Positions 356 to 59,064 of a DNA stretch of 64,000 bases are shown piece by piece; the stretch's first letter is position 1; each line of letters starts with the position of its first letter. The notes beneath the pieces are model-generated. The model worked only from the letters and a program-made list of their open reading frames with translations, was not told where the DNA came from and made no database searches. Position numbers and translations under genes: made by a program. This DNA is from Macrostomum lignano (taxonomy: Eukaryota), in the NCBI GenBank assembly GCA_002269645.1, contig NIVC01003605.1, forward strand, positions 24,470 through 88,469, read 5' to 3'.

Positions 356-15797
<15,442 letters not shown>

Positions 15798-21673: not shown

Positions 21674-21705
<32 letters not shown>

Positions 21706-21774
21706 TTGTTGCTGAAACTGGTTATAGCTCAGCGGCCTAGGATTCGGATATGACTGCGGCTGCTGACTTGTCAT
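18955..21774 (-). CDS. RIMBP: Intronless RIMS-binding-protein-like protein (939 aa): Q/P-rich N-terminus, long coiled coil, one FN3 domain, C-terminal SH3
   Basis: Uninterrupted 939-aa ORF. FN3-like PPMNVRISRVLGDGSIMLEWEAP...VAGYRVFVNG; RIMBP-type SH3 with the SP insert, ARDYRPSEESPSAFPSYELELRRGDDVTTFGPMRPDGMYNAEVNGHRGLVP; heptad-rich centre. Confidence 0.85.
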
Positions 21775-38300: not shown

Positions 38301-38396
38301 AACATGACTCTGCACCAGCTGGGCATGGCCATCCGCAACCAGAGCAAAATACGGCTCTCCATCCGAGCTAAGCACAAGACAGACTCAACCGCCTGA
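29385..38396 (+). CDS. Harmonin-N-like (HHD) domain, long disordered region and C-terminal PDZ (whirlin/PDZD7-like); start exon unresolved
   Basis: Exons 29385-30003, 30219-31521, 34242-34510, 34767-35112, 37139-38166, 38250-38396 (TGA), with consistent phases. HHD: LRKAAHQLLSREECETFKAALRAF...LISSLEKIIDSPKKLSLLREIALLLP. PDZ: ITLVKAGGTFGLSV..VLVSAVATGSPAYQQ|GIQPGDELLELEG. Confidence 0.85.
33407..33915 (+). mobile_element. hAT-Charlie (MER58-like) MITE with a ~330-bp internal GA-rich tract
   Basis: 5' end CGGGGTTCGGCAAGATTTTTTTACCTCCAAGGCCAAAT..ACTACGGGCC; 3' end GCGGGCCGCATGTGGCCCACGGGTCGGAGTTTGTCGACCC; homologous to 56932-58533 and 40085-40340. Confidence 0.7.
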
Positions 38397-39659: not shown

Positions 39660-39990
39660 AAGGGGGCGCTTTTATGTGCCAGCGGTCCAGGCTCGATTCC
39701 AAGTGCAGTCACATTACTTTGGGGCTAAATTGGAATCTCGGCTTGGCTCTGCTCTTGCAATAAACGCCCTTGAGGGCCAACCCCCAAGGCACAGTGAAGT
39801 GTACACGTGCCTAACGATAAATAAAGTTAGGGCCGCTGTACACTCCTGTGTGAGTTGTGTGCCCGTGCGCTTGGTGTGCCTGCTCAGGGGATTCGCCGGA
39901 TGGGCAGTAATGCCTCGCCGGTTAAAGTGTGACAATGTCGCTTAAAGTGAGCCAGGATGCGCACAGCACTCAGCCACGCGAATCTAATAA
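39660..39990 (+). mobile_element. SINE-like element
   Basis: B-box-like GCTCGATTCC near 39690, 3' part shared with 10830-10975, and an A-rich tail (taataaataaaa). Confidence 0.55.
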
Positions 39991-40084
39991 ATAAAATATG
40001 TACATGTAAATCTATATACATCACTTGTTGGAAGACCCGTTTTAGTTAACTTTCAAGTACACGTACAATTTACATGTAGCCTAC

Positions 40085-40340
40085 TGCTGGTAAGCTCTTG
40101 GTTGCCACATGCAGCCCGCCAATTAGCCTCTGATCTATCCGGCCATCGGGTCTTTCGAAACTTCACAATGGCAAATCTGCGGGCGCTCAATTGGAGTCCT
40201 CTCTTATCTCCTCTCTCATCTCTTCTCTCTCCACTCATCTCTTCTCTCATCTCATGCAACTTTCCTCTTTCATCTGGCCCGCAGCCAGGCAGTAGCTAGT
40301 TTAATCTGTATCTGGCCGTAGGGTTAAAAGCACTTTGGAT
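40085..40340 (-). mobile_element. Inverted copy of the GA-tract MITE (~70-bp tract)
   Basis: Reverse complement contains CGGCCAGATA..GGCTGCGGGCCAGATGA, then a GA tract, then GCGGGCTGCATGTGG. Confidence 0.6.
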
Positions 40341-41363
40341 AGTATAGCTTTACATAATTAATTGGTTGCCATCCCTGTGGGGAGCAGTGGCGCTGGAGTT
40401 GCTTATGAGCTACACTAATTCAGTTTATTTTGGTTTATTTTGGCTAAACCCAACTGAAATTCCGATTAAACAATGTTAATGTTTCAACGGCCTTCACAAT
40501 ATTCGATCATTATAGATTGCTTTCAGTGTTACATGTGCATTAAGACCCTCAATCTCAGGGAAGCAGGAGGGACAATCGAAATTGGTTGACACGCAAGGGC
40601 ATTGTGATGGCTGCCCACCGGAAAAGCAATTTGTCATTCTCAATTTTTCTCTTAGACTTGTCGTGTAGCCGGCCTCCTGTGCCAGAATCTGTAATAATTG
40701 ATGATGCATGCAGCTGAGTTCACGAATTGAACTGGACCGAAGTCAATCCGTCAACACACAGCAATAGAAACATGTGATTCATAATAACAATGGACACCCA
40801 TTGTATAATGATTTATATAATAATACTCATTGTACAATGAGTATAATGATAAGGTTAAACATTAACAAATGCAGAAAGGAAAGATTGAATGGAAAAACTC
40901 AATTTATCAAGCTAAGCCAAGGTTTCTAAAGCGTATGCTTTTACGCTACTTTAAGTAGCTGAATCGATTGCATATATTTCTGTGCAAAGAAAGTAAAGTT
41001 TTTTTCGATACATATCGGAGATATAGGATACAACATACATGTACTAGTGGTAGCTGTTAAGTTTTGTGCATATAAATTTGCAAGGAATGGAATTTTACAC
41101 TTCATAGGTGAAGTCTACCACTCGGCACTATTATTAATCGCTATTAAATTTTACCTTTTGGCTTTGAGTTGAAGTTAAAATTAAGATAAAGTCCAGACTC
41201 AAAGGAATCAAGAACGAATGCAATGGCTCAAGAAAATAAAATCGCTTTGACTAAGCCAGCTTTGTTCTTAACTTAAAATTTATGAACTGTTGTTTTCACA
41301 ATCCATCTAAAAGTCTAAAACGAATTCTGATGTCAAAATAACAATGGAATTGTGCAAAAACTA

Positions 41364-41436
41364 TGGTTCGGCCCGGGCTCGAACCGGGGACCTTCTGTGT
41401 GTGAGACAGATGTGATAACCACTACACCACCGAACC
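41364..41436 (-). tRNA. trnV-CAC: tRNA-Val (anticodon CAC)
   Basis: GGTTCGGTGGTGTAGTGGTTATCACATCTGTCTCACACACAGAAGGTCCCCGGTTCGAGCCCGGGCCGAACCA: 73 nt, perfect 7-bp acceptor stem, anticodon arm TCTGT-CTCACAC-ACAGA, A and B boxes, and a downstream T5 Pol III terminator (41356-41360). Confidence 0.97.
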
Positions 41437-42372
41437 GTTACTCCTATAAGTGTAGCATAGTACTTATATTGCAGAGAATTTTGCCAGAGCAACTGCTGTA
41501 CTGTACACTCCACAGTGCAGTGACCTCTCATTTCAAACGCATTTTATGCACATTTCACGTTTTGCAGTAGAATAGATACTCGTACAAGCTATCAATAAAG
41601 ATTTTTTATAAAGTACATTATTGTCATTGATCGTGTATGATCTATATTTCATGACATTTTTTCAGTTTCTATGGTTTAAATAATGATTAGCTTTATAAGC
41701 CCAACTGCCCAACATTGGAGCAATTTCTATTTTTTGCTACTGTAAGTAGTCAAAAATAATTATTTAACGCAAAATTCAAGCATTTAGCTTACAAACTACA
41801 TGTAGAAACTAGCAAACGATTCCAATAAATAAATTTAAGCCGCAAATGCTACACAGACTACTTAGTAAATGTGTTATAATAGGAAAACTCAGTCGCGAGT
41901 ACAACGCGCGCGGGATTCTTGTACACAACAACAAAACAAAGGTATATTTGCAGGAAAATAGACACACACAGAGAAAAAGGCATTGCAAAAAGCAGCAGCA
42001 GCAAGCAGATTAAATGAATGGGCAAAATAAGGAGATTTTGTACAGAATGGAAACCGAAATAGTATATGTTAATGTTTGCCCAGGTAAAAAGTAAAAAATC
42101 CCAAAACATCGATAAAAGGAAAAAAACTTTACTGCCAAGGATAAAAGAAGTAAAAAAGAGAGCATTATAACAATAAATAATGCTTTGGCTAGTAAATGTT
42201 TCCGCTCAGAAAGTTATATAATAATAGTAAAACTCGACAACGCTATGCGTATAATAAAATAATTAAAATCACACAATTAAAGGCATTAAAGCTTTTTTAT
42301 TATGAATAATTAAGGCTTCATCTGTCACTTAAAATTCATCTGATTTGCAAAAATGAAATCTGCAATATTGAG

Positions 42373-42376
<4 letters not shown>

Positions 42377-42419
<43 letters not shown>
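42377..42419. repeat. (CT)n microsatellite
   Basis: Directly visible. Confidence 0.95.
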
Positions 42420-42421
<2 letters not shown>

Positions 42422-44639
42422 CAAATCGGTCATAATAAACAATAATAAAATCGTGGAGTTTAGCAAGAAGTCATACAGCAAGTTGGTCACCCACAGGAAA
42501 CATGAGGATACAATCACAGATTCTAAAATAACAAGATGGGCCACTCAGGCAATTATACTTCGTAAATCAGCTTTCTACTTTCAGTTCAGTAGTAAGGAAG
42601 AATATATAAACTATTTTATAAAATAAAGGCAGCTAAAATGACTTTGATAAGATTAGAAGCCCAAGCTTGCAGGCGTAAACAACTTGCTAATTGGCTTAGC
42701 AGTAATGTACAACAATGTACATTGGCCCGTCCAGAGAAATGTACATGGCAGCTTTAGGCTGGAATTCCGAGAAAGGCAATAAAAATTGGGGTGGCGGGGG
42801 TGGTGTGGAAAGGCGCGATTTAGGCTGGGGGTAGGAGCCAATAAAGTGAGCCTTAACTTTAAGAACATATTAAAATGCTTATGTTTAACTTACTACTGAA
42901 CTGAAAGTAGCTTACACGCAAATCAAGATAAGTGGCCCATCTAGTTGTTCCAGAATCTGTCGGCACTGCCAACCTTAGAAGATCTCAAACAGATCCAAGG
43001 CATGCTAGTTCGATATCTTGAACTTGAGTCGACTAATTTTATTGTTCAAAGGAAGTAATGAATTTTATTCAAGTACAACTGGCCGCGAGACATGCATAAA
43101 CCTGCATAATTCTTTACAGTAGAAACGAGTAATAATTAACACGGCAATCAGGACCCGCTTGCGAGCCTCGGGAAGACAGGCTTAGGGACATATCATGATT
43201 AAAAAGTTGAAAATGGAACCACAGATAAACAAAATTATGTAAGTTAGCTGTATTGGTAATTTCATATTTACACAGTCAACAAGATTTAAAGCCGGAAAAC
43301 AATAAAACAATGGATGCTGCCGAAGTAAAAAAACACAATTAAAGTCAAGTTTCTTCTATTAAAGCAGAATTTTACACGTACAAAAAACTGCTGACCAAAA
43401 ATGAAATTGCAACAAATCCCCGTAAACAGTGTTAATCCGTCATTTTAGTTTATTTTTTTCGATACAAAACTTAAACAGTCTTTGCCACAGATAATACAAT
43501 AACTGCTACTCGTTTCTCAGTAGTAAAATTAGCGTTTTTTGTCTTTATTAAAGTTTCCCAAGATAATTAAATTTAAAGTTTACCTAAAGTAGTGACATTT
43601 TCTACCTAACCTACCCCAATACGACAATACAATTGGAGCAGTTGCAACATTTTACTCAGACAGCCGGTCTTGACAATTAAAACACTTGACGATCTGTGCA
43701 GAAACCAGTGAGAAACCAGTTCAGCAACCTGATATCTATGCATCAATATCTGTACAAACAAAAGTGAGCAAAAGCGATACGGTATTCAGTAAAGCCAAAA
43801 ACTTCCGCGTGTACCGAGCGCATAAGTCAGATTTTTGGAAGACACAAAAAGACGCAATAAAACTTCTCTACAATAGAGTTAAGATTCAGTTGGCCACGAA
43901 AACACACTACTGTCAGTAGGCAGCACACTATTCATATTTACAGACGCAGGTCAGTGAATTAATCTGGTAAAGGACAGAAGGCAACGTGTACGGTAATTTT
44001 CTGAATAGAAGTCAGCAAAAGACTATTTAACAGTTGGAAGGGTTGGGCGCACTACTTACTCGGCAGTAGTATAGCCAATAGCCCATCGTTTCAAAAAAAG
44101 GAGAGAGAAAAGCTCACCCTGGATTGGCAACCAGTACTAAAACCAAAAAAGTCTTATTGACACAATATAAGCCAACTGCGCTACTGTTCAGTAGGCAGCC
44201 TGCGCATTTTACAATCTAAAAAATCAAAACACCAAGGAAAACAAAGAAATTAAGATTTATAAATATGCGTGGAAAAATAATAAAATAAGGAAATTGGGAT
44301 TACATGAGATTCAGTAAAACGGGATAACGGTTGATGGGGCAGTGAAAGGTGGTTTACATGCGGGGATGTATATATGAATATATCAAATGTATATATTAAT
44401 ATCAAAAACACTTCAATAAAAGGTTGTTAGGCTTTAATGAATATAATTAACCATTTTTGTCAATAACAAGGCAAAATTTGTCCGGAAGACTTAAAATCTA
44501 CCAAGTAAATTCAGAAATAAATCTGACAGCAACACGGTGTTGAGAGAACCGATTCATTAGTCATTAATTTTCCTCTCTAGGCAAGCTTTTCGGCGCAATA
44601 TGGAACTTTTGTTGTGTTGGAAGTTGTTTGCTCAAAATG

Positions 44640-44990
44640 GGACTTGGCGGCACAGATCAAAGGACTGAGGAAGGGTGGACTTGCCGGCACAGATCAAAGG
44701 ACTGAGGAAGGGTGGACTTGGCGGCACAGATCAAAGGACTGAGGAAGGTGGACTTGCGGCACAGATCAAAGGACTGAGGAAGGTTAGACTTGCGGCAAGA
44801 TCAAAGGACTGAGGAAGGTTAGACTTGCCGGCAAAGATCAAAGGACTAAGGTAGACTTGCGGCACAGATCAAAGGACTGAGGAAGGTTAGACTTGGCGGC
44901 ACAGATCAAAGGACTAAGGGTGGACTTGGCGGCACAGATCAAAGGACTGAGGAAGGGTGGAACTGGTGGCCTAGATCAAAGGACTGAGGA
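44640..44990. repeat. ~37-bp tandem repeat GGACTTGGCGGCACAGATCAAAGGACTGAGGAAGGGT (~10 copies)
   Basis: Head-to-tail copies with small indels and no spacers. Confidence 0.95.
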
Positions 44991-45084
44991 AAAAAACAAA
45001 ATGACAAACAGAAGCTACAGGCCTGCGATCCCAGACTGAGTAGACAATCTGACAGACTACAGTTTCCATCCCATCAGGCTACAG

Positions 45085-46100
45085 CTACAATTGTGGCGCA
45101 CTGGGACCGGCAGTCAACAGCTTGTGCTGCAACCAAATCGCTTTCAATGCGTTAGCAACTTCTGGGCTGAGTGGCGGCGGTGGCGGAGGCTGCTGCTGCT
45201 GCTGCCGATGTTGAGGCTGCTGATGAGCCTCCGCTGGCGAATGCAGAGGCGGCGGCGGAGGCGTCAGCTGAATTGCAGCTAAAATGCGAACGACAAAAAT
45301 GCATTTGTTTCAGGCCCTGATCGCGCTACTTATAGTAGAAATATAAAGGAGTAGTGGCACAAAAGTATGTTTAAAAATCATACACGCGGTGAAAATACAC
45401 AGTTGAGGCGTGTCAGAGTCGCTGTACAATCACCGAGTTGCGTCTAAAGCGCATCTGCTTCACTCAATGAAACTAGAATACAGAACTCACGTTGCGTAGT
45501 CAGGCCCTGGCCGGCCGCATGAGTGGTGTAGTGCTTCCTGAGATAATCTGCCCTAGCAAAGCCTTTGCCGCAGAGTTCGCAGCGGTGCGGCTTGCAGCCG
45601 GAGTGCACGGTGCGCACGTGCCGGTTCAGGGTAGACCGGTCGAAGAACTCTCGGTCGCAGGCGGTGCAGGCCAGGCGGGTGGCGGCCGCAGAAGCTCCGC
45701 TGGCACCGGCAGCGGATGGCGAAGGTCTCAGCGGCTCCGGCTGAGGCGATGCAAACCCTTTTCCCGCGGCGCCGTCTTTGATTGACAAGTCGAGCGGCGC
45801 CAGGGAGCAGCCGCCGCCACCGGCGCCTGTGTCAATGTCGGCCTCATCTTCGTCCTCGTCCTCCTGGTCGATGTCCTTGAGCTCGTTGTCTCCGTCTCTG
45901 AGCAGCAGCAGACTGCTGTGTCTGATATCAAATTTTGCCTCTGTGTCTTTTTTAGCTTCATAATGCCGCGGCAAAAGGCTGATGGATCGGGACGGCGGCT
46001 GCTGCTGCTGGTCCTGCGGCTGCTCCTCCAGCGGCGATGGTGGAGACGGCGGCGGCCGCGGCACGGGGCCGCGCAGCGAGATAACTGGCTTCCGCCGCAT
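45085..46100 (-). CDS. C2H2 zinc-finger protein (two fingers) with a PLDLS CtBP-binding motif
   Basis: Exons complement(45491-46100) and complement(45085-45278); donor C|GTGAGT and acceptor ttttag|CT, both phase 1. Fingers CTACDREFFDRSTLNRHVRTVH and CELCGKGFARADYLRKHYTTH; APLDLSI motif. Confidence 0.85.
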
Positions 46101-47149
46101 GGCCAGCAAGGTACATAAATTTTTAAGGTTTCAAAGTTCAAAGCCTTCAATATACAGTAGCACTGAGAGCTTTCCGCTCTGTATAGCCATGCCAGCTACA
46201 TAGCCAACTTCAAAACCGGCATCAATCAATCCAATCCAAGTTTAAAATTGGTCTGCAGACACAAAGTATAAATTTTATTCAAATTTGAGAATTAATAAGA
46301 GTATGAGATGAATATTAATACTTTTAAATAATGCCAACATGAAGTTGATATACATGTCGGGACAATTTTAACATGATTTTTATATTAGCTGAAGACCAAA
46401 ACATACAGTAAGAATACAAGCTACATTACCTAGGGTAATAATGTACCTTACAATTCTGTAAACTGTCAGCCAATAAGGGAATAATTATACAGCAAATAAG
46501 CTTAAGCTATGTGAATACATTTGTATGCATTGCTAAGGCCTAAAGAAACTAAAATAAAAAACTATTTTCAACATTTAGGCACAACTGCTATTTGACAAGC
46601 CAAACTAAATGGCATGATTGTGGTAGATCAGGGTAAGCCACAAAATTTATGACTTTTAGTTTATTTATGATTTATCTTGCTAGTGCAAGTGACAATGTTG
46701 CAGCAAGTCAATGGGCAAAGTAGGTAATAATATCTTCAACATATATGCATGACTACTAGAAGACTAGCAAATACAGCTAATATAATTGTAATAGACAAAG
46801 AGTAAGTCATAAAAAGATTTATTTTTTTAGGAATTTGACAATAAATTGAAGAATTTTTAGATTGTTTTGAATAATTTGAAGAACTGAATAGAATTCTTAA
46901 ATCAAAACCTAGTCACATATAATTTCAGGGATTATATATAACAATCCAAAATTAGGTAAAAATAGTACTAATTCCTATTTCTTTAAATTCCAATATAACT
47001 ACTGCTTTGTAAAGTTTTATAACAAGAACCATTTTAACATCTATGCAACAAACCAAAAAACTGTCACACCCTTTGCCAAGTGAATGTATTATATATAGAA
47101 TTTTTACTTTTCTCCCATTCTAGATAGCAGTTAGCTCCACATTAGATCT

Positions 47150-47900
47150 TAATAGAGAATTAGATATAAGCTGGTTCACTGCAGTTAATGAGCAAATTGA
47201 TGGATCTAAAGTTGAACATTCCCAGTGACCAGGAAAAAGAACAGTAATTATAAGATATGAGAACTATGGCATCTTGTTGAAGATATCACTAATGTCAGGC
47301 TAGTACCTGTCTGAGTTCCTCTTGCGTATCAAAAGTTAGACCCAATTTGCAACATCCTAAGATTGTGAACAGAAAGAAGAGTGTATCAAGCAGAATGGTC
47401 CAACATATGTGCTGAACTAGGAATACATAGTTGATATGGGAAAACTGATTGGAATTATTTTGCTATGTTGGAGTTGCAGAGACAGTGCATCTGGATTCTA
47501 TACTTGTTCCTCTTCATTAGGATATATTGCTTGAACAGCAGTCTTCCTTTGTATAGCATAAGACTTATTGGTATATAACTGCTTATAAAGCCTATATCTT
47601 AGCCAAGGGATCCCCTATCCAGAGCCTCAATGCAATCATCAAGATGCAAATAAGATTAAGCTCTACTTGAATCTGTCTCTAAGAAGACAACAAGGCTTAG
47701 CAAGAAGTGCACAAGTGAAAAGCTAAACTGTATAGCCAATAGCTAGAGATTTCAAGTCTTGTCTAGTCTTATTGACCTACCTATGGAATTTTCAGATTCT
47801 CACATCAATTGAAGCCAACCAATTGTTTGATGATAGACTGGGCTATCAAAATTTGTCTACAAATGAAGGTTGTGGCATAGCTTAGCTTTGCCATATTTTT
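47150..47900 (-). pseudogene. Heavily mutated piggyBac transposase remnant
   Basis: Across frameshifts the minus strand gives EISSYW, LRDRFK*, SYLHLDD, DPLAKI*, TNKS-LMLYKGRLLFKQYILMKRNKYRIQMHCLCNS and YARGT. These follow the piggyBac order (YW..MSRxRF..LHF.D..D.LxKIR..IDES..FKGR..FKQYIP.K..KYGIK..LCDS..GT.R). Confidence 0.75.
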
Positions 47901-48624
47901 CTTTGCCTAGGCTATCATGTTTTCACAGATAGCTGGTTCAATTCTTATAGACTTGCTATATGGTTGCTACAATCTTTTTATTCTTCTTATTGTCATGGTA
48001 TACAAAAACTTGACATTGTTATACATTGAAGTAAATTATGCTATTTAGCTATACTATGCTATTTGTAATAGAAAAGAAGAGTAGAGAAACAAAATATCAA
48101 TTCTTAGTTTTCAATTTTTTCTATTATAGCATAAGTAGTGCAACTGTATAATCACTGTATATGCAATCAACCTGAACCTATCTTATTACCTAAGCACTTG
48201 TACAACTTAGTGGCATTTAATAGGCTTGCAAAAGATAAAACAAGTATACCTATTGAGGTAGAAGCCAGCATAATAATTGCAAACTTGCTAAAAGAAATTG
48301 ACAAAAGGGGATGAGAAATTTGAAAAATACACTCCTAGAGAAGACATTCAAAACTGGCTCATTTTGCTTGAACCCCTATTAGAGTAAATATAGAAACCCT
48401 ACTTAATAAATACTTTTCATTGGCTGAGACCATGCTTGGGAGCAACCTAAGGATTTACCTGGCTGTTTCTATTGGCAATACACATATAAGTCACTATTGG
48501 ATGGAATAGTAGTCATATGACTGCTCTTAGCCAATAGCAACTTATATGTGTATATTGCTAATAGAAATGACCAAGTGATTCCAATGGTTGCGCATGCATA
48601 GCTAAGACTATGGTTGTGTCTTTA

Positions 48625-49410
48625 GGCTCATTCCATATAAGCATGGTCGTAACATGACAGGTTATTTTTACTTATAAAATGAAATCTAATAATACAATAT
48701 ACTAAACCAATATTTTAAATGAAAGTTTATTTTGTCTAGAATATATTTATAGAGTTTCATATAGATATCATCATTAGTATAGATGCTATTAAACCTTAAA
48801 TGACACTTATGGTCGTAACGACAGGATTTTTGACATATAGAAACTAAAAGGTAAAAGTCTTATAACATTTTTCATTTTTGATATTTTTCAATACATTTTT
48901 AAAATTTGACTAAGAACATCTTTAGAAATCATACTCTTTTATTAGAATATATAAACTCAAAAGGCAACAAAGATACAAAAGAAAAGGCAGCCTTATGGTC
49001 ATAACATTATGGTCGTAACATATTTTTTTCTGTCAATTCAGTAACTTTGAGGTACTAATACATTAAAAATATAATAGATTATTTGGTCACCAATGCTTTT
49101 ATCTGATGATGCAAGTACTATACTTTTATCTATAGTTTGTTTCAATCTTCAAAAGCTTTCTATTTGTTTTTAAAAGGTACAAAATCTTAATGATGTCTTT
49201 TGCTTCGAAAAATGTCCAAATTTTTACAAAAATGACTTTTTGCCAATTGATAACATACTAATCCAACATTTTACCATTCCTTTATTCTTAGATTGTATAT
49301 ATTGCACAATATAAAAATTTGGTAAAAAAATAGGCTAATTAGGCAATGGCAAGCAAAAATATTGACTTTTTTCTATTTTCCAAATATGTCTATCTTATAT
49401 GGAATGAGCC
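48625..49410. mobile_element. 786-bp MITE with perfect 17-bp TIRs (GGCTCATTCCATATAAG) and TTTA direct repeats
   Basis: TIRs at 48625-48641 and 49394-49410; TTTA at 48621-48624 and 49411-49414; internal ATGGTCGTAAC repeats. Confidence 0.88.
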
Positions 49411-50240
49411 TTTAGCTTTTGCTAGTTGGAGTGCATTCATTAGTTGGAAGTACATTTGAACTAGATTAAAACTTTCAGGGCCAAAATGTATTACTTCATT
49501 GCAATAGTATCTACTTTGACTCTAGTTGTGACACTAGAATATTAAAATTATGATGGATAGTCAGATACCTTTGCCCACTAATCTAATAGGGGCTTGAACA
49601 GCAATTCAAGAGCAAAAAGCTTAGTGAATTAAAAAAGAATATAAAAAAGAACTATTTACTATTGTATTCTTAACAAATGCAAATGCAAATGCTTATTTTA
49701 TATCTATGGCTTAGCTATGCTCAAATATATAGATAAGTAAGTTGTAGCCCCAAAGGCTGATTATTTCTTTTCTAGCACAAGAGCTAGCATACCATTAATA
49801 CAACATTTACAAATTTAAATATTCTAAAAGAGAGTAAGCATAGAATGAACAATAGAAAAAATAACTTTTAATATTAATATATTTGACAAAGAAGTATCAA
49901 ATGAGTACAAAGTGAATAAAGCACAGAAACAAAAGATATGAATAAAAGCTAAAAGTAAAAATATTATTAGACTTAGAGTGCCTAGTCATTTTGTCTTTGT
50001 TTTGATAATAATCTTTACAAATATAAGCCTAAAGCCTAGAGACCAAGCGAGATTAGTAGAAGTAGACATTGTAGCTAATGCCAAACCAAATTTAAAAAGA
50101 CATAGATTCAATAAGTAGGCTTGAACCAAAACCTGGCCATTGTTTCTTCTATAATCAACTAGGACCTATGAGACCATAGGTAAGATACTATTACCATTGC
50201 CAGATTAGCTTCAGCCTTCAATTGATATAGGCCTACCTAG

Positions 50241-50444
50241 CAGAGGTAGCAGAGCCTAATATTTTAGGGGGAGGGGCACTGGGTACAGACAGGGCAAGGG
50301 GGGCACAGGTACCTTTATAAGCTGCTAATAAGGGCCTAAAATCAGAAAAAGCACTAAAAATTAACATGTGGTCTGTGGACTCATTTTCTGGGAGAGGGGG
50401 GCATAAGGATATGCCCCTAGTGCCACAAGCTCTTGCCGCCCATG
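50241..50444. mobile_element. Small hAT-type MITE
   Basis: Left end CAGAGGTAGCAGAGC versus right end (reverse complement) CATGGGCGGCAAGAGC; GGGGGCA/TGCCCC internal motifs; 8-bp flanks CTACCTAG and ATGCCTAG. Confidence 0.65.
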
Positions 50445-52349
50445 ATGCCTAGCAGAAGCTCCCATAAGATATCATAAGAAAGTGACTATAAAGTAGGCCT
50501 AATATATAAATTTTGATAATAATAGCTTAATAATAGCCTAATTTTAGATATAGCTAAGCCAATAGAATTTCATATGGCCTAGGCTAGGCCTATTTATTTG
50601 TAATTAATTAAATGCAAATTTAGTCTAATACTAATAGGCCTAGTGTAGCCTATCTCAAAATCATGGTCATGGTATTGTTTTTTTAATCTATGGTCGATTA
50701 GGCTGTTTTATGTTTTGTTAGGCGTATATAGTAATAGTTGTAGGCCTACCCATATTAGCATGTTTTGATATAGTAATATAGTATACTGTAGGTATAAGTA
50801 GGCCTATGTATGCTAATCAGCATAATATAGTTGTTGTTATGCTGTATGTGTATATGTATTAAAATGCGTATCTAGAGCCTGTCTCTGATTAGCGGTATAG
50901 GCCCTAGTTTGCCTGATCGCCCCTAGGGCCTAGTCAATGAGGCCTTGACACTTGACACTGACAGTAGGCGGCGTAGGCCCCTAGAACTAACTAGGCCTAA
51001 CACGAACAGCCTACAATAGTTTAAAAGAATTAAAGACAAAACCAACGTATAAAAATATGTGTATAGTCATACAAATCATAACATATCAAACTCGCCAGAC
51101 AAGAGTGGTTGAGATGATTAACAGGGTCTAATCAAGCATTTCGTTAATATCTTGACAACAAAAAATGCTATCTACCGGTTTCTACCGCTGCGTCACAACT
51201 TTTCATTTCATGTATTTGTTTATATTAAATGCCATATAAAAAGTTAAAAATGTTTTTTTAAACTTTGCTATCACCACAAAAACATGCGATTAGCTTAAAG
51301 CCGCTTTTAACTCTACGTAGCTTTGTTTAGACGCTTACCATTTTTATGTTTTATATTTAAATTTGAAAAAGTAATTTTTTTCCATGAACTTCAAAGTATT
51401 CTTATTATAAAATAGAGACACACACAGATTGAGGCAGGGCGCTGCATGTTACACATTACACTTAAAGTTGGACTAATAATTGTATAATTTATGTTAAGCA
51501 ATTTTTACAAGTGTCAAGTAACCGACAAACTTTATGCCAGTACTGAGCCATCATTTTAATTAAAATTCAGTTAAATCTAGCATTTTGTGATAGTTTTACT
51601 TAGAATGAAAAATGAAGTTCTCTGGCCTAGCTGGCCTGGCCTAACATGATATTTATATGGCTAAGATGAATTTAATTTTCGTTTTATTTAAACCAGTAGG
51701 TCAATAGCTACTTAGAATAATGAAATCTAGTCTAATGTGCAATTGCTGCTCTGCTTTTACCTTTTGTTTTGTTGGGTGTCTAAATCTTTAGGGCCTATTT
51801 ATTTAATATTAGAATTGGGGCACTCAATATTCGCATGGTACCACGTAAATCGGGCTTTCATTGAGGTAAGGTGGCACGCTTTAGAAGGCAAAGAAATATA
51901 AAAGTGAAAATCAACATAGATTATATTATAATGCTATTCTTTTGACGTGTTTTGGTCCAACTAGGCTAGGGCCATCTTCAGGTCTACTGTCTTTTTAGTC
52001 ACAAAACAACTTTTATAAGAGATAAGTGAACAAATGTTTACTATACAGTCCAAGGGGCATATCATGGGCAGAATTTTCAAAGTAAATAAAATCTTATTTA
52101 CTTTGAAAATAATTTGAGTAGAGATTTAATTTAATTTTAATTTTAATTTTTAACTCATTAAGCAGCTTTTCAACTGCTTAGGTAAAAAACAGCTTAAATA
52201 AGTAGAGTGTCAACTGTCAATGAGTCCTGCTACCTACTAGGGCCTACTACAGTCTATATTAATGCAAAGGATTAGTCAAGTCAGTCACGTTGAAACTTTT
52301 TCTGGGCAATAGATGCAAGCAAAGGTGTCATAGCTGCCAGCTCAGCAGT

Positions 52350-54652
52350 CTTCCTCTTTAAAACTAATTGCATAATTCGCTCTAACTCTTCTTCATTCCT
52401 TTTCCAAATATGATCCTTCGCCTTTCGAAGCTCTTCAAGCTCATTTTCGTGCATCTCTGCTTTCTACTAAGCTTCTTTAAGCAACAGAAGTGCAACACTC
52501 TTCTTTTTTTCCCTAATTTCCATTGCATTTGAAACATCCATTTGCAAAGAGCTGAATTGCTTGCTAGCTTTCTTTTTTGCCTCCACTTTAGTGAGCACCC
52601 CTTTCGTTAGCTTTTTATAGCGCTCTCACTTTGCTTCTGCTGCCTTATCCTTCAGTCTCTGTCAGTATGCCAAATGAGCACTTGCGCACATGTTCAGAGA
52701 GCTAAGGTGACGGGCAGATTTGCAGCAGTCTATTTCTTTATAGACAAACAGGAACAAGTGACAATTAACTTAAGGCCTTGACAGTGAAGGGTGCCGAACT
52801 CATTTGCTTCTTAGTAACTGTGTCCCAAACCATAAACCAGACTCAAGACTCACTCAAATTCAGCATTCCCATGTGGGAGAATAAGAAGTGCTTTGACAAA
52901 TCTGATAGAGGATGATTACTAGCCTTAGATACAGACTCCCAAAGCTCAATAACATTTGACAACTCTAACTCTAGAATCTCTATCTGGTGTAGACATACCT
53001 CAACTTCCACATTGCCAATCTCCATGTCAGTGAAAGCAAATTACATTTCCGCCGCAAGGGTTGTAACCCACTTAACATACAATAAATTACACTGCTCCTT
53101 CAGATCCAGCATTTTCAGGCCTTGACGAACTTACTCTTGAAGGGCAAGTAGTCCCTTAGTTTTTCAGTTCCAACTTGGAAGAATTTTTTCATTGCTTGAA
53201 GACACACTTGCTAGTCGTTAGCACTCATGTCAACAAACAATCCCTTTGCTGGCTCACCCATCCTAATGCTATAGGGCCCTAGCCAGACAGCTGGATCATC
53301 CAAGTTGACTTTCCATGGATGCCACTTGGAAAGCTTGGCCAAATCTACAAATTGCATCAGCTAGCACTTTATCAAGTCTAGCATTTGAATGTGTAGGATG
53401 TGGAGCTAGGAGCTTTCCTGCTGGAAAAGAAGCTCAAAATGCTAAAGTGGCTGCAAAACCTTGACTAAGAAGCAAAGAAAGAACTCAGTCTTTGGATCTC
53501 TTAGGGCCTTTTTATGGTACCAGTGTGCAGCCCTGAGTCCCTACTCTTGATGTTCAGTTCCAAAAAAAACTTATCAATTGGTGCATATAGATAGAGCACT
53601 TGTTCAAGGATAGGCAGCACTTAGAGCCACCAGGTGTCCACAGGTCTGAGGAATGCGAGCTTCTTTATCTCACAGAAGCTGTCAGCTAGAATGTCATCAA
53701 AACCATCCAATTGCACTATCTTAAAGAAGGCGTAGATCTCCTTAAGCAAGTGTTCTATTGACATTCCAAGGTCTGAAGAACCATAGGCATATCTAGCCAC
53801 GTTAGTGATATGGTGTAAGGAACAGCCTCCTAGATTGATTATGTTAGGAAACCCATTGGTTTTTAGCCTAACAACTGTACCACTCTTGACACCACACATA
53901 GCATTATAACTGTCACTCATAATAGAGAGACAGTTGTTGCTATTGATTCTACACTCCAACATTGACTGATGGATGGAAGTCGCCATTGCCTCTGCTGTTG
54001 TAGACTTTAACTTACACAAGTCAATGCAGACCACTTTAACGTCAAAAGACAAGCTGGGCAGGAAGCGGGCAACTACTCCAAGGTATTTGGATCCTTTATT
54101 AGCCTCATTGATTTGGAGCGAGAACCATTTAGCTGTGCGGATCTCTTGCAGCACTACTTCTCTGATGTATAGAAACAATGCATCCTAAAAGAGATAAGCA
54201 ATCTTGCTTTCATGGAGCTGCATACAGGGAGGAATCTTTGAATCTCGACAAATCGCAGCAATATTCTCAGTGAGATCTTCTGATTCGAAGCTGCGTGCCT
54301 TGATTACAAGTCTTGTAACACATCGGATCTCAGCTGCCCATGTATCAGCAATTGTACTGCTTGTGTCTAATGTAGTTGAAGCAACTATATTGCCTGAGCT
54401 GGCTTCAGCAGCGCCTTCAACATCAGTTTGGGTTTGAGTCACCACCGGCAGTGGAGCGCAGTTCTTTCTACTGGACAAAATCTTTTTATGTTTGCCAGCC
54501 TCTGCGTGGCTTCTAAAGTTGGTCAGGCCACTTTTTATTTCAAAAGTTTTGGCACCAGTTGCAGCGCACTGTGCTACTCTCGCTGTTGAGCTTCTTTGCC
54601 CAGATACCAATCTTTTTGCCATTGTTATCAGTGCACTCCAGCCAGTCTTCAT
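52350..54652 (-). pseudogene. Decayed hAT transposase
   Basis: Zn-finger-like N-terminus (LTNFRSHAEAGKHKK), FSLQINE (first D region), IMSDSYNAM, GGCSLHH (CxxH), DTWWL (RW motif), LLILPHGNAEFE*VLS (catalytic E region), and a Lys-rich tail; multiple stops and frameshifts. Confidence 0.87.
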
Positions 54653-55768
54653 TCCAAGCCACTGGTAACCTCGGGCTATTACTTAGGCTTATGGAGGCAC
54701 TGGATTGAGTTGTTGAATGGCTGAAAGTATCAAAAGATAAACAAAAGGTATAAGCAGACTATGCTAGCTTTTACAAATCCATAGTTGCATAGATAACACA
54801 TTTATCTATCTCATGATATTTATTATTAGACGAATCCTAAAAATCTATACATTTAACAAAATAAAATGTTTGATTAAGACAATAAAAACATGGTGATAGC
54901 TTCATTTTATTCAAGTACTACACAATAAAGAATAAAGAATTCAGTAGTCAAAAATTTATTTAATAAGCATTTGTATGAAGGCCCATTACACAACACAATT
55001 CTTTAGAAAAACTTATAAGAAGCATTTTGTTTTTTTTTTGCATTCTCCATTGCCTTCAATTTTTGTGTCCGGGTGATAGAATTTGCATATCCACGTTATT
55101 TTCGTGTTTGACATGAATTCGCGTCATGTCCACAGCCCTTAGAGGTCTATATACTCGTAATTTATCAAGCTTAGAGAAGTTCCGAAGTATCAATTTCATT
55201 TTCCAAAATTTGAATTTTTTAAAAGCAAATTTCAATTTTGAAAAAAATTAGAAGTCAAAATTTTAGAAGTGTCTAAAAAGTTGCTAAAATAAACTAATTT
55301 CTGCTACATATACATGTATTTCATTTTGCATAAGCAGTAAATTGAAAGTAAAAAGTGAGTGTTGGTCATACTAAACTTACTAAACTAAACTTTTTCTGAA
55401 TTTTGATTTTGGAAAATTTCAATTTCTATTTTGGAAAGTTACCAAATTTTGATTTCAACAAAATCGAAATGGAAATCCTAAAGCATGGTAAAATAGTTTG
55501 ACTCTTTTCTAAATGCGCGTCTGCGAGTTTTACATTTATTCCAATAGAGCTTGACTGAACCAAGGGTGAAGGGAGTCTGTATTTATAGCCCAAGAATCCC
55601 TAGTGCACCTTTGTGCACAAGACCTTCTGACTTTTTCTTTTTTAGAACTGATGTCACTTCCTGCCAGAGCGAATGCAGGGTCCCTAGGCAAAGTGCACAG
55701 GGCTGTGTGACTCACTGTCTATTTTTAGAAACATGAGTCACCTCTGGCAAGGGCTCCGGGGCACGTGA

Positions 55769-56460
55769 TCTCTAACTATAAAAATCAAAACTCTGTCTGT
55801 GTGTCTGTCTGTCTGTCTGTGTGTCTGTGGACAATTTTGATCGCTATGGACTCCCAAACCACTCAACCAACTAACACCAAATTTTACACCCACCCTAAAC
55901 TTACTACGGAGAATGTCTTAGGCTATCTTTCAATTTCCTAAATTTGAGTCTTCCTACCTAAAAGTGCAAAAAACTGCTCAAAATGCGCGATTTTTTCACT
56001 TAATCCTCCATAGCGCCGCTCCACTTCTACCGATTCTCTTCAAATTTGACACAGATAATCTTTAACTATTTTGGCACAATCATGTAAAATTTTGAGTCTC
56101 AAAGTTAATCCTGAGCGGTGCTGGGCACTTTTAAAGTTAGGCTGTTTTTTTCAGCGTAGCAACCACCCCAACCTCCACCCGCCTGCCTCTCCCGATCTGG
56201 GCAAAAGGTGTAAATAGGTTTTAAAATGACTAACTTTCGGCTGCCATAAGTTTTCTCCACGTGAGGCGATTGGCTTCAAATTTGACACAATTCTTCATTG
56301 ACTCATTCTCTGTCTAAATGTAAAGTCTCAACTCTGTATCTTAATCAGGACAGAAACTATAAGCATGTAAAGTTTGTCTGCTTTTTCTGTTGTTTGTGCC
56401 ACTCACTCACTCATTCCCCAGAGCCAGACGAAGGGTCAGGCGATAGGGCTCAATGTACAT
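55769..56460 (+). mobile_element. Possible non-autonomous Helitron/DINE-like element
   Basis: A|TCTCTAACTATAAAAATC start, (GTCT)n microsatellite, AAACCACTCAACC..CCAAATTTT motif and a 3' GAGCC..GGCTC hairpin. No clear CTRR end. Confidence 0.4.
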
Positions 56461-56931
56461 AGCGAATGTACAGTGTTTTGGAATAACTTTTTAATAGCCT
56501 TCTCTGTACCCCCGCGAGTGGAGAGGCGTGGAGAGGAGAGAGTTTAGCGAGAGATTCAATTTCAAACCAGTGTCCTCTGAATAGACAAGTCTGCAGCAGT
56601 TAAACAAGGATGGCAAATCAAGGCGATATGGGATGGTTTGTAAAAATATCGAAAAATTAATGAATAACTGATTACAATGCAATCCTACTAAATTAGTTAC
56701 ACCATGAAAATTCTAACATTAAGATTCGCATAAGGTAACTTTAAAATTTAAATGGCCTCCTAAGAAATGCATATTTCCATGGTTGTTAGACTGCTGCAGA
56801 CTGTGGTGGTGGAGCTGGAGATATACAAATTTCTCTCAGGGCTGCTAATTGACCAGAAAGATGACGTGATTAAAGCATGAGAAATGATAACAACCATGAT
56901 AGTATTACGTCCCACAAACTGGCTTTCGAAG

Positions 56932-58533
56932 CAGGGATCGGCAGATTTTTATCTCAAAGGCCAGATAAAGAATCCAGCTCATGGCTACGGGCCAGATGAG
57001 AGTGAAAAGGAAAAAGAATAGACTATTAGAAAGGGAGGAGGGGCGAGAGGAGATAAAAGAAAAGATAGAAGATAACAGGAGAGACGTACGAGGAGGTTGA
57101 GGAGAGAGCAGAGAATATGGGACGAAGAAGCGAGAGGAGGGGAGAGAAGAATGTAGAGGAAATAGTAGAGGTGAGAAGATGGAGAGAGAAGAGGGGAGAG
57201 ATGAGACAGAGGATCGATGAGAGAGGAGAGTAGAGAAGAGTGAGATGAGAGAACAAAGAGGAGATGAGAGTATCGAGAGGGGGGATTAGAAAGGATAGAG
57301 GAGAAGAGATAAGAGGGGGAGAGACGAGTGAGAAGAGAGAAGATAGAGATGAGAGAGAGAGTTGAGAAAGAAGAGAGGACAAAGGAGAGATGATAGAGTA
57401 AAGGGAAGAGGAGAGAGGAAAGAGATGAGATTGTAAAGATGAGTGAGATGAAAGGAAATATGAGAGAGTAGATTAGAGATGAGAGATGAAGGAAGAGAGA
57501 GCAGAGTGCGGAGAGACGAGAAAAGAGAATAGAGGGGAGAGAGTATAGAAGAGGGAAGAGAAGAGAGGAGTAAGGAAAGAGAGGAGTCAGAAGAGGGGAA
57601 AGAGAAGAGTACACAGTAGAGAGGAGAGTAGAGATGACAGAAGAGAGAGGGGAATGAGAGAGCAAAGATGAGAGTGAACAGACGATATAAGAGAGGAGAG
57701 AGGAGAGTGAGAGAGAAGAGAGAAGACAAGAGAGGGAGAGAGTATAGAAGAGAGAAGAGAAGAGACGAGAAGAAAGAAGAAAGGATCGAGTCCTCCTGAG
57801 TCAAAAAGGGGAAAGAGAGGAGTACAAGGGGAGAGAGGTGAGAGAACATATGAGAGGAAAGATGACAGATAAGAGAGGGGAGATGAGAGAGCAGAAACGA
57901 GAGTGAACAGACGAGAGATGGGAGAGTAGAGAGAAAAGAGGAGAGATAAGAAATAAGGGATGAGAGGTGGAGACAAGGGAGAGATGAGAAGTGAGTGAGG
58001 AGAGAGGAGGGGAAGGGAGAGAATCGAGAGGACAGGGGAAATTGGTGAAAAGGACGAGAGAGGAGAGGAAAGAGGGGAGAGAAGAGAGAGAAGAGAGATG
58101 AGAGGAGAGAGTGGACAGAGGAGAGGAAAGAGTTGAGAGAAGAGAAGAAAAAGGAGAGAGTAGAGATAAGGAAAGTGTTGAGAGAGGGTAGAGTAAGGAG
58201 TGAGAAGAGAGGTGAGGGAAGAGAGAGCAGAGAGCAGAGGGAAGAGAGAGTAGAGAGCAGAGAGAAATGAGAAAAGATAAAACAGGAGAAAGGAGATATG
58301 AGAGACCAGAGACCAGAGCGAAGAGAGGAGAAGAGAGAGAAAAGAATAGAGGGGAGAGGGAAGAGATGAGAGAAGAGACAAGAGAGGAGAGAAGAAAGAA
58401 GAGATAAGAGGGGAGAGAGAGAAGAGACGAGAGAGAAGATAAGAAACAGAAAAGAAGATGGAAGTTTCAAAGAATGCAAAGGACATAGGGAGAGGCAGAG
58501 GTACGTAGAGGCCAGAGTTTGCCTGACATTCTG
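56932..58533 (+). mobile_element. hAT-Charlie (MER58-like) MITE with a ~1.5-kb internal polypurine (GA-rich) tract
   Basis: Starts CAGGGATCGGCAGATTTTTATCTCAAAGGCCAGATA..GGCTACGGGCCAGATG; ends GAGGCCAGAGTTTGCCTGACATTCTG; GA tract about 56997-58490. Confidence 0.7.
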
Positions 58534-59064
58534 CGCAGCACCCCAGCCAACAATATCAATGTTTGCCTCAAATCCTAATTTTACATGAATGTACACTTTT
58601 TTATGTTTAACTCTATCCTAACTATTAACAAGGGAACAAGTTTCTGTTTGAGTTTTACCTCAGATTTTAGAAAACATGCAAAAATAATTCCCGGGAATGG
58701 AGTTCCCCGGGTTCAAAATCCGCGGGTTTCAACAGCTTGTTTCCTATAAACACAGACAAGCAAGTGTAGCAAATATGTTTAATGCACTTTAGGACTACAA
58801 GAAGACAAGGCTTGTCATATGACTAGGTCATATGAAAATGAAAACAGGCCACCATCGTGACCTCAGGACATAAGCGAAACAAGAGCAGACCACAGCAGAG
58901 ATAACCGTGGCTACAAACAAGAGGGTAGAGAACAGACAGAAAATGAGGGGGAGGGCAGCAAACAAGCAGACAAAAGATAGCAAAAAGCTCTTCTGCAGAC
59001 AGTCTGGTAGACAGTCTCTGGATGTCTAGCAAAAAAACATTATAGCATCTATAGTATGTGGTAA

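What the first reader, a model, noticed from the sequence alone, without database searches (positions are those of the whole stretch)
46250..50700. Sharply bounded CpG desert with a CG-to-TA mutation signature: candidate targeted (RIP-like) transposon-mutating system in an animal
Seen: my manual count is only about 10 CpGs in about 4.5 kb (on the order of 100 expected from base composition), with none between about 46360-47320 or 47330-48585. Equally AT-rich DNA at 16000-18900 and the Crypton, LINE and MITE copies elsewhere keep CpGs. TAG/CTA words are abundant. Where the ancestral state can be inferred, CG often became TA rather than TG or CA (see the piggyBac and MITE findings). Established: 5mC deamination gives CG to TG/CA, and after the first hit the site is no longer CpG; CpA-to-TpA is the context of fungal repeat-induced point mutation. 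Inference: an excess of TA implies concerted two-strand deamination, or deamination/methylation at CpA, confined to a nested transposon domain. This would be an undescribed genome-defence process in this lineage.
Basis: partly seen in the sequence, partly recalled or inferred. Interest (0 to 1): 0.85.

Follow-up and report, generated by a model that had tools for sequence, protein, structure and literature searches.

The report
Flatworm repeat block that loses cytosines
A repeat-rich stretch between two genes of the flatworm Macrostomum lignano has lost almost all its CpG sites because cytosines there, and only there, keep mutating to thymine, which is most simply the footprint of local DNA methylation rather than a new fungus-like genome-defence system.

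Summary
The CpG desert is real: 11 CpGs in 4,451 bp against 110 expected (o/e 0.10), while AT-matched DNA nearby has o/e about 1. The window is Macrostomum lignano, a flatworm reported to keep DNMT1 and DNMT3. Two other copies of the locus in the same assembly carry the same desert, so it is native and older than their roughly 2% divergence.

Differences between the copies show what is happening:
- **Inside the CpG-poor block (46.25-55.7 kb):** C/T transitions are raised at CG (18/57 and 3/13 sites), at CAG (21/194 against 26/769 for other CpA) and about 2.8-fold at all other cytosines. T-to-C is unchanged.
- **In the flanks:** none of these effects is seen.

No CG-to-TA double change was found among 32 CpG changes. 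RIP indices fail, CpA as a class is not favoured, and there is no 5' base preference of the AID/APOBEC type.

The best explanation is a germline-methylated, transposon-rich intergenic domain (CG, plus weaker CAG and other non-CG methylation) that decays by deamination. The oldest part has run out of CpGs. The methylation itself is inferred, not measured.

The parts
46250..50700 (.). CpG desert proper: AT-rich (GC 0.315), non-coding, CpG o/e 0.10 (0.03-0.06 outside the MITE). It is the oldest, CpG-exhausted part of the hypermutable block.
   Evidence: for composition. One search found no Pfam domain in six frames. One search shows the same depletion in all three copies (11, 11 and 7 CpGs). Searches give CpG transitions 3/13, YAG 5/66, and non-CpG C>T 3.25% against 1.15% in the flank.
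48442..48591 (.). Imperfect 150-bp palindrome (foldback), 75% complementary.
   Evidence: The arm alignment shows a CA-versus-TG mismatch (AAGTCACT against AAGTTGCT), which points to an ancestral CG that decayed separately in each arm. A weak mir-96 hit far below threshold is only the hairpin.
48626..49409 (.). Young non-autonomous TIR element (MITE-like, 784 bp) with perfect 18-nt TIRs at 48624-48641 and 49394-49411 and a repeated TATGGTCGTAAC motif. It holds 5 of the desert's 11 CpGs.
   Evidence: for the TIRs. Searches show it is absent from copy L004, whose empty site reads GTGT|CTTTAG|CTTTTGC, so the target-site duplication is CTTTAG. It is 100% identical between the window and L003. CpG o/e is 0.39-0.40.
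50228..50994 (.). Cluster of 19 TAGGCC/GGCCTA words (the palindromic word TAGGCCTA) that straddles the right-hand CpG boundary.
   Evidence: 10 words lie before 50695 and 9 after. The boundary of CpG loss is therefore not a boundary between sequence families.
50701..52200 (.). TAG-rich segment that keeps its CpGs (o/e 0.6-0.7) and shows no CpG hypermutability. It is a gap in the hypermutable block. Homology with copy L003 ends at 52201.
   Evidence: for composition. One search gives CpG transitions of 1/47, 2/46 and 3/43. Searches place the L003 break.
52201..55700 (-). CpG-poor block (o/e 0.31-0.35) with a decayed hAT-like transposase reading frame (ORFs 53621-54178 and 54185-54652, broken by stops). 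It is a younger part of the same hypermutable block, with the classical TG/CA excess.
   Evidence: for the ORFs. for composition. Searches give CpG 18/57 (31.6%), YAG 14/102 (13.7%), YAH 12/291 (4.1%) and other non-CpG 29/871 (3.3%) between the window and L004. The hAT assignment rests on motif resemblance only, with no Pfam or database hit.
45085..46103 (-). C2H2 zinc-finger gene (BOX15_Mlig001326g2). It is CpG-rich (o/e about 0.95) and its start codon lies about 150 bp from the left edge of the desert. It marks the unaffected flank.
   Evidence: Flank spectrum: CpG 14/851 (1.6%), YAG 5/399 (1.3%), other 38/3212 (1.2%).

Best explanation
The desert is the oldest part of a roughly 9.5-kb transposon-rich intergenic block (46.25-55.7 kb). 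The block lies between two divergently transcribed genes of Macrostomum lignano.

In the germline this block, but not its flanks, is densely cytosine-methylated by the DNMT1/DNMT3 system the species retains. Methylation is near-complete at CG, partial at CAG and low at other cytosines. 5-methylcytosine deaminates to thymine, so CG decays to TG/CA, CAG to TAG and other C to T. T-to-C back-mutation stays at the background rate. Old sequence therefore runs to CpG exhaustion and becomes AT- and TAG-rich. Later arrivals (the hAT-like element and the MITE) are only partly decayed.

Apparent 'CG to TA' cases are two ordinary steps. One example is CCG to CTG, whose other strand reads CAG, followed by CTG to CTA.

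**Shown:** the depletion, its presence in three copies, and the context- and domain-specific substitution rates. **Inferred:** that methylation is the cause, and which enzymes are responsible.
For: - **Organism.** The window is M. lignano. The species is reported to keep DNMT1 and DNMT3 with low overall 5mC (PMC11292947, PMC9246332, PMC10658182).
- **Native and old.** The desert is present and equally CpG-poor in three contigs whose divergence matches that of the flanks.
- **CpG hypermutability only in CpG-poor DNA.** Rates are 18/57 against 29/871 in 52201-55700 (p 1e-11), 3/13 against 32/972 in the desert (p 0.009), and 14/851 against 38/3212 in the flank (not significant).
- **CAG effect only inside the block.** YAG is 21/194 against YAH 26/769 (p 1e-4). 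It replicated in the hAT part at 14/102 against 29/871 (p 5e-5). The flank shows 5/399 against 13/1036. The polarised direction is CAG>TAG 6/93 against TAG>CAG 2/244.
- **Cytosine-specific.** Non-CpG C>T is 3.25% against 1.15% (p 0.0003), while T>C is 1.07% against 1.03%.
- **The 3' context matters, the 5' base does not.** The -1 base at the 14 CAG events is T4 A5 G2 C3. TAG and CTA are symmetric, 59 against 61. This is how methyltransferase targets behave.
- **Classical decay index.** (CpA+TpG)/(ApC+GpT) is 1.41-1.53 in CpG-poor parts against 1.16-1.19 in controls.
- **Boundary position.** The right boundary cuts through a homogeneous word cluster, and the young MITE keeps more CpGs.
- **Simulation.** CpG hypermutability plus the measured AT-biased spectrum reproduces TA o/e of about 1 and CA/TG of about 1.1-1.2.
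Against: - No methylation data were available, so 5mC on this DNA is inferred.
- CpG o/e of 0.03-0.06 needs a CpG rate multiplier of about 20-40 in the simulation. Recent substitutions suggest only about 7-10 relative to other cytosines in the block, or about 20 relative to the flank.
- Five of about six ancestral CpGs in the desert are conserved in all three copies, so the survivors may not be hypermutable.
- A 2.8-fold rise in C>T at all non-CG cytosines would need several per cent germline non-CG methylation. To my knowledge that is unusual for an invertebrate.
- The segment 50701-52200 sits inside the block, is TAG-rich, and is not CpG-hypermutable.
- Counts are small (21 CAG events, 21 CpG events) and come from one locus. 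The 52-55.7 kb part has only two copies, so it is unpolarised.
- The recently inserted MITE is already CpG-poor and CAG-poor, so some of the composition is inherited rather than made in place.
Confidence: 0.62

Rival explanations
1. An active, transposon-targeted cytosine-mutating defence, RIP-like in function. A DNMT-like or deaminase enzyme converts C to U/T directly within marked repeat domains. The mutation itself, not methylation, would be the point.
For: C>T is raised at every cytosine context inside the block while T>C is unchanged. CAG, a subset of CpA, is preferred. The effect is confined to a transposon-rich block with sharp edges. CpG loss is more extreme than the recent rates predict.
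Against: - RIP indices fail, at 1.41 and CRI -0.39. CpA as a class is not preferred.
- There is no 5' context of the AID/APOBEC type and no strand asymmetry.
- The whole locus exists in three 97-99% identical copies, yet only the block is affected, so duplication is not the trigger.
- The ranking CG >> CAG > CH is what DNMT3-type methylation gives (my own knowledge of mammalian DNMT3 flanking preferences).
- The host has DNMT1 and DNMT3 (PMC11292947).
Confidence: 0.1
2. Inherited composition. The desert is made of transposon copies that were already CpG-poor and TAG-rich when they inserted, through long decay of their families elsewhere or arrival from another genome. In-place decay would be minor.
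For: The MITE inserted after the copies split. It is 100% identical between two copies and absent in the third, yet it already has CpG o/e 0.40 and TAG:CAG of 27:6. TAG richness extends past the CpG boundary, to 52.2 kb. The surviving CpGs in the desert are mostly conserved.
Against: Apart from the MITE, no transposon ends, coding remnants or family relatives were found for the desert. The right boundary cuts through one homogeneous word cluster. CG and CAG hypermutability and the raised C>T are seen in place between homeologous copies. The palindrome arms record in-place CG decay.
Confidence: 0.2
3. Assembly chimera, contaminant DNA, or chance composition.
For: None beyond the sharp change in composition.
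Against: Three separate contigs (NIVC01003605.1, NIVC01001803.1 and NIVC01003425.1) carry the block in the same gene context. Their divergence inside it is 2-3%, as in the flanks. The chance probability is about 1e-24.
Confidence: 0.01

Closest known systems
5mC-driven CpG depletion of germline-methylated DNA (vertebrate genomes, and methylated transposons or gene bodies in mosaic invertebrate methylomes)
   Same: Local CpG o/e far below that of neighbouring DNA. TG/CA excess over AC/GT. Remaining CpGs mutate by single-step transitions several-fold faster than other cytosines. Sharp edge next to an unmethylated-looking, CpG-rich gene start.
   Different: The depletion is more extreme (o/e 0.03-0.06) than typical vertebrate bulk DNA. 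It affects an intergenic repeat block rather than gene bodies, which keep o/e 0.8-1.1 in this window. It occurs in a free-living flatworm, a group for which a 2022 review calls genome-wide methylation patterns unknown (PMC9246332).
DNMT3-type non-CG methylation (mCAG/mCAC in mammalian germ, stem and neural cells) and plant CHG methylation
   Same: The target is defined by bases 3' of the cytosine. The ranking is CG >> CAG > other CH. CTG may also be slightly raised (6/94 against 3.3%).
   Different: Here it is seen only as a mutational footprint, not as methylation. To my knowledge a germline non-CG component strong enough to shape sequence has not been described in an invertebrate.
Fungal repeat-induced point mutation (RIP)
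   Same: C-to-T mutation concentrated on repeat-rich DNA with sharp limits. It yields AT-rich, stop-codon-rich, non-coding sequence.
   Different: No CpA-wide preference. The substrate index is 1.41 rather than below 1.03. CpG is the main target. Duplicated flanks are spared. The premeiotic dikaryotic stage in which fungal RIP acts has no counterpart in an animal.
AID/APOBEC editing of mobile elements
   Same: Cytosine-specific C-to-T change.
   Different: There is no dependence on the 5' neighbour (TC, CC or WRC) and no strand-biased clustering. The dependence is on 3' bases instead.

Membership tests
Fungal-type RIP | C-to-T mainly at CpA, giving TpA/ApT above 0.89 together with (CpA+TpG)/(ApC+GpT) below 1.03 (positive composite index) | tested here: not met
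   The indices are 1.02 and 1.41, and the composite index is -0.39. Polarised C>T is CpA 16/458, CpC 7/211 and CpT 15/501.
Fungal-type RIP | Triggered by sequence duplication, with all duplicated DNA above the length and identity threshold mutated | tested here: not met
   The whole locus is present in three copies at 97-99% identity, but only 46.25-50.7 and 52.2-55.7 kb are affected. The flank spectrum is flat.
Fungal-type RIP | Dependence on a RID/Masc1-type enzyme | not testable with these tools
Germline 5mC-methylated domain decaying by deamination | CpG o/e depressed relative to composition-matched neighbouring DNA | tested here: met
   The desert is 0.10, or 0.03-0.06 without the MITE. 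Controls are 0.78-1.07.
Germline 5mC-methylated domain decaying by deamination | Remaining CpGs show an elevated transition rate, limited to the domain, by single steps to TG/CA | tested here: met
   Rates are 18/57 and 3/13 inside against 14/851 in the flank. All 32 changes are single-step.
Germline 5mC-methylated domain decaying by deamination | Excess of the deamination products TpG/CpA | tested here: met
   (CpA+TpG)/(ApC+GpT) is 1.41-1.53 against 1.16-1.19 in controls. The CA/TG o/e alone is not clearly raised in the right half of the desert, at 0.96.
Germline 5mC-methylated domain decaying by deamination | DNMT1 and DNMT3 present in the organism | not tested
   This rests on the literature only. 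PMC11292947 and PMC9246332 cite Wasik et al. 2015, and that primary paper was not held.
Germline 5mC-methylated domain decaying by deamination | 5-methylcytosine actually present on this DNA in the germline | not testable with these tools
   No bisulfite or long-read modification data were available.
DNMT3-type non-CG (CAG) methylation footprint | C/T transitions raised at CAG relative to CAA, CAC and CAT, inside the domain only, in the direction C to T | tested here: met
   YAG is 21/194 against YAH 26/769 (p 1e-4). The flank is 5/399 against 13/1036. CAG>TAG is 6/93 against TAG>CAG 2/244. Counts are small and come from one locus.
AID/APOBEC-type editing | Preference set by the base(s) 5' of the edited C, with strand-coordinated clusters | tested here: not met
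   The -1 base at the 14 CAG events is T4 A5 G2 C3. On the + strand, TAG is 59 against CTA 61.
MITE / non-autonomous TIR transposon (element 48626-49409) | Terminal inverted repeats, target-site duplication, and presence/absence polymorphism with an intact empty site | tested here: met
   The element has 18-nt perfect TIRs. The target-site duplication is CTTTAG and the empty site is in L004. Its superfamily was not determined.

The most novel reading that the evidence does not exclude
Macrostomum lignano has a germline system that marks particular repeat-rich domains and drives cytosine-specific hypermutation there at CG, CAG and, more weakly, every other C. In this reading the system is a mutagenic transposon defence (functionally RIP-like, or unusually dense non-CG methylation for an animal), and the decay is not a passive by-product of ordinary CpG methylation.
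Probability: 0.15. Interest if true: 0.8.

Novelty: new variant of a known kind. Interest (0 to 1): 0.45.

Why it matters
[quoted passage not shown] M. lignano is one of the few flatworms reported to keep DNMT1 and DNMT3.

This locus gives a sequence-only prediction about that pattern. Methylation, or some other cytosine-specific process, appears targeted to intergenic transposon blocks rather than gene bodies. It appears to have a CAG-preferring non-CG component. It also appears strong enough to erase CpGs completely.

The species' duplicated genome offers built-in homeologous copies, so the mutation spectrum can be measured genome-wide and set against methylation maps. If the non-CG component is real, it bears on when DNMT3-type non-CG methylation arose in animals. 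It also bears on whether methylation acts as a mutagenic brake on transposons outside vertebrates.

Tried and rejected
- **Pfam scan of the desert.** Six-frame translation of 46201-50800, with stops masked, gave no domain and no piggyBac transposase.
- **Relatives of the desert.** BLAST of the desert against the window and against the other M. lignano DNA fetched found none. The whole window has only one dispersed repeat pair (10877-10974 and 39867-39968), and both copies keep their CpGs.
- **hAT-like ORFs.** They have no Pfam hit and no homologue in the protein database.
- **Sampling more M. lignano DNA.** An attempt through the Crypton-like ORF failed. The exact product is not on record, and its homologues sit on contigs of 1.5-2.4 kb.
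- **Contig NIVC01001159.1 (L002).** It is nearly identical to the window, with 4 transitions in 5,655 sites, and stops short of the desert. It added no control data.
- **RNA searches.** Rfam and tRNA scans of 44-57 kb found nothing above threshold.
- **Candidate TIRs.** A 20-nt pair at 51750 and 54739 has no matching target-site duplication, so I did not use it.
- **Dcm-like CCWGG origin for CTAG.** I considered this, but TAG is enriched after A, C and T alike and CCAAG/CTTGG is not enriched.
- **Transgene or CpG-free vector origin.** I considered this and rejected it, because the three copies differ by 2-3%.
- **Primary literature.** The Wasik et al. 2015 paper with the bisulfite data is not in the library.


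Full report
**1. The observation.**

Window 46250-50700 has 11 CpGs in 4,451 bp (GC 0.315), against 110 expected from base composition, so o/e is 0.10. Two thousand shuffles gave 110 +/- 8.8 and never fewer than 84. Poisson P is about 3e-24 even at the window-wide o/e of 0.78. The CpG-free runs 46358-47325 and 47325-48591 are the two longest in the window. The AT-matched stretch 16000-18900 has o/e 1.07, and other DNA of the same organism has 0.7-1.2. TAG/CTA words are enriched. TAG:CAG is 211:69 against 218:237 in AT-matched controls (p 1.6e-13), and CTAG is 3.8-fold enriched.

**2. Where it is.**

A 939-aa ORF of the window is encoded on NIVC01003605.1 of assembly GCA_002269645.1, and the window is the last 64 kb of that contig. 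Protein names identify the organism as Macrostomum lignano.

The desert begins about 150 bp upstream of the start codon of a CpG-rich C2H2 zinc-finger gene (45085-46103, minus strand). It lies in a roughly 10-kb intergenic region. The next gene, a 2,122-aa product on the plus strand, starts near 56.3 kb (inferred).

The desert has no Pfam-detectable coding remnant, no Rfam or tRNA gene and no relative elsewhere in the window. Its recognisable features are:
- **A 784-bp TIR element at 48626-49409.** It holds 5 of the 11 CpGs.
- **A 150-bp imperfect palindrome at 48442-48591**.
- **A cluster of TAGGCCTA words at 50228-50994.** It straddles the right-hand CpG boundary.

To the right lie a TAG-rich segment that keeps its CpGs (50701-52200, o/e 0.6-0.7) and a decayed hAT-like element (52.2-55.7 kb, o/e 0.31-0.35).

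**3. Three copies.**

The zinc-finger protein has two near-identical paralogues on other contigs. Fetching their loci gave two more copies of the region. L003 matches window 35085-52201 at about 98%. L004 matches 35095-55772.

All three copies carry the desert with the same depletion, at 11, 11 and 7 CpGs. The desert is therefore native, not a chimera or contaminant, and it predates the roughly 2% divergence of the copies. The TIR element is absent from L004. Its empty site reads GTGT|CTTTAG|CTTTTGC, which makes it a young insertion with a CTTTAG target-site duplication.

**4. What the copies say about mutation.**

Pairwise transitions between the window and L004, per site with a strict alignment filter:

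| Region | CpG | YAG | YAH | Other non-CpG |
|---|---|---|---|---|
| hAT-like block 52201-55700 | 18/57 (31.6%) | 14/102 (13.7%) | 12/291 (4.1%) | 29/871 (3.3%) |
| Desert 46250-50700 | 3/13 | 5/66 | 12/347 (3.5%) | 32/972 |
| Segment 50701-52200 | 1/47 | 2/26 | 2/131 | 8/353 |
| Left flank 35085-46249 | 14/851 (1.6%) | 5/399 (1.3%) | 13/1036 (1.3%) | 38/3212 (1.2%) |

Further points:
- Over the whole block, YAG is 21/194 against YAH 26/769 (p 1e-4). The hAT part is an independent replication of a hypothesis raised from the desert's composition (p 5e-5 against all other non-CpG cytosines).
- With three copies the direction can be read: CAG>TAG 6/93 against TAG>CAG 2/244.
- Non-CpG C>T is 3.25% in the desert against 1.15% in the AT-rich non-coding flank (p 0.0003). 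T>C is 1.07% against 1.03%.
- The base 5' of the mutated C shows no preference (T4 A5 G2 C3), and TAG and CTA are symmetric.

The block is therefore subject to a cytosine-specific, domain-restricted C-to-T process ranked CG >> CAG > other C, and that ranking is set by the 3' context.

**5. The CG-to-TA claim.**

Among the three copies, all 32 transition-type changes at CpGs are single steps to or from TG or CA, and none involves TA. At 2% divergence this excludes only an ongoing concerted process, not a past one.

Two older records inside the desert agree. The palindrome arms differ by CA against TG at one site, the mark of an ancestral CG that decayed separately in each arm. The MITE motif variant TATGGTCATAAC is a CG-to-CA change.

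RIP indices fail. TpA/ApT is 1.02, but (CpA+TpG)/(ApC+GpT) is 1.41 and the composite is -0.39. CpA, CpC and CpT cytosines mutate alike.

TA richness does not track CpG loss across segments:

| Segment | CpG o/e | TA o/e |
|---|---|---|
| hAT block | 0.29 | 0.75 |
| 50700-52000 | 0.65 | 1.10 |

A simulation with the measured AT-biased spectrum and CpG hypermutability alone moves TA o/e from 0.82 to about 1.0, and TAG:CAG to about 2.5. The TA and TAG excess is therefore what old, neutrally decaying sequence becomes. The CAG effect adds to it. Routes such as CCG to CTG to CTA account for apparent CG-to-TA conversions as two ordinary steps.

**6. Mechanism.**

M. lignano is reported to retain DNMT1 and DNMT3 and to have low overall 5mC (PMC11292947, PMC9246332 and PMC10658182, all citing Wasik et al. 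2015, which I could not read). The simplest account is germline methylation of this block with spontaneous deamination. Methylation would be near-complete at CG, partial at CAG and low at other cytosines. I know that ranking from DNMT3 enzymes in mammals, and I did not test it here.

On this account the desert is the old, CpG-exhausted part. The hAT-like element and the MITE are later arrivals caught in mid-decay.

What is shown is the depletion, its age and the context- and domain-specific rates. What is inferred is the methylation itself and the enzymes.

Points of tension:
- CpG o/e of 0.03-0.06 needs a larger CpG multiplier (20-40) than the 7-10 seen recently within the block.
- The few surviving CpGs are mostly conserved.
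- The segment 50701-52200 is spared.
- The young MITE arrived already CpG-poor, so part of the composition is inherited.

**7. Rivals.**

- **Active RIP-like or deaminase-based mutator.** It is not excluded, because C>T is raised in all contexts. It lacks every RIP hallmark tested, and it lacks the 5' context of AID/APOBEC enzymes. The triplicated flanks are spared.
- **Purely inherited composition.** It is weakened by the in-place rate differences, by the palindrome record, and by a boundary that cuts through one word cluster.
- **Chimera, contaminant or chance.** These are refuted.

**8. Verdict.**

The finding is real, and it is more than old methylated repeats, because a non-CG (CAG-preferring) and general C-to-T component is measurable. 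It is best read as a strong local instance of methylation-driven cytosine decay in a flatworm, not as a new RIP-like system. The evidence comes from one locus with small counts. Methylation maps and a genome-wide homeologue spectrum would settle it.

Noticed in passing
window 48626-49409: A 784-bp TIR element with perfect 18-nt inverted ends (AGGCTCATTCCATATAAG) and three or four copies of a TATGGTCGTAAC motif. It is present in two copies of the locus and absent in the third, whose empty site is intact with a CTTTAG duplication. A similar ATGGTCAT/TATGGTCGAT motif recurs at about 50662-50698. The superfamily was not determined.
   Followed up: partly
window 50228-50994: Nineteen occurrences of TAGGCC/GGCCTA (the palindromic 8-mer TAGGCCTA) lie in under 800 bp, against one or two per kb elsewhere. 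Its nature is unknown (degenerate short palindromic repeat or protein-binding array).
   Followed up: no
window 52201 / L003 1-3892: Homology between the window and copy L003 stops abruptly at 52201. The 3.9 kb beyond it in L003 has no match anywhere in the window and has normal CpG content (o/e 0.9-1.2). This is a structural difference between homeologous copies, either an insertion or a rearrangement.
   Followed up: partly
window 55773-58739: About 3 kb present in the window is missing from copy L004, which jumps from 55772 to 58740. It contains long low-complexity Ser/Leu-rich ORFs (56985-58596).
   Followed up: no
window 8966-23631 / L002: The start of contig NIVC01001159.1 is almost identical to the window (4 transitions in 5,655 filtered sites). 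Nearly all differences fall in the tandem repeat at 9.0-10.4 kb. The two contigs probably represent the same haplotype assembled twice, or a very recent duplicate.
   Followed up: partly
window 42000-43000: A small patch in the otherwise normal flank has CpG o/e 0.56 and 4/32 CpG-site transitions between copies. It may be a second, minor hypermutable patch.
   Followed up: no
window 44640-44991: A 37-bp tandem repeat (about 10 units, CpG-containing) lies just downstream of the zinc-finger gene. Its copy number and register differ among the three copies of the locus.
   Followed up: no
window 22839-24120 (minus strand): Crypton-like ORFs whose homologues carry DUF3504 (PF12012), and in one case a phage-integrase domain. 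This element keeps a normal CpG content (o/e about 1.0-1.1), so not all transposons in this window are depleted.
   Followed up: partly
window 2500-3500, 5000-6000, 60000-61500: These other CpG-poor stretches (o/e 0.04-0.2) are tandem repeats whose unit lacks CpG. They are a different phenomenon from the desert.
   Followed up: no
window 51750-51769 and 54739-54758: A 20-nt inverted repeat pair (95% match) brackets the hAT-like reading frame, but no matching target-site duplication was found. The element's true ends remain undefined.
   Followed up: partly
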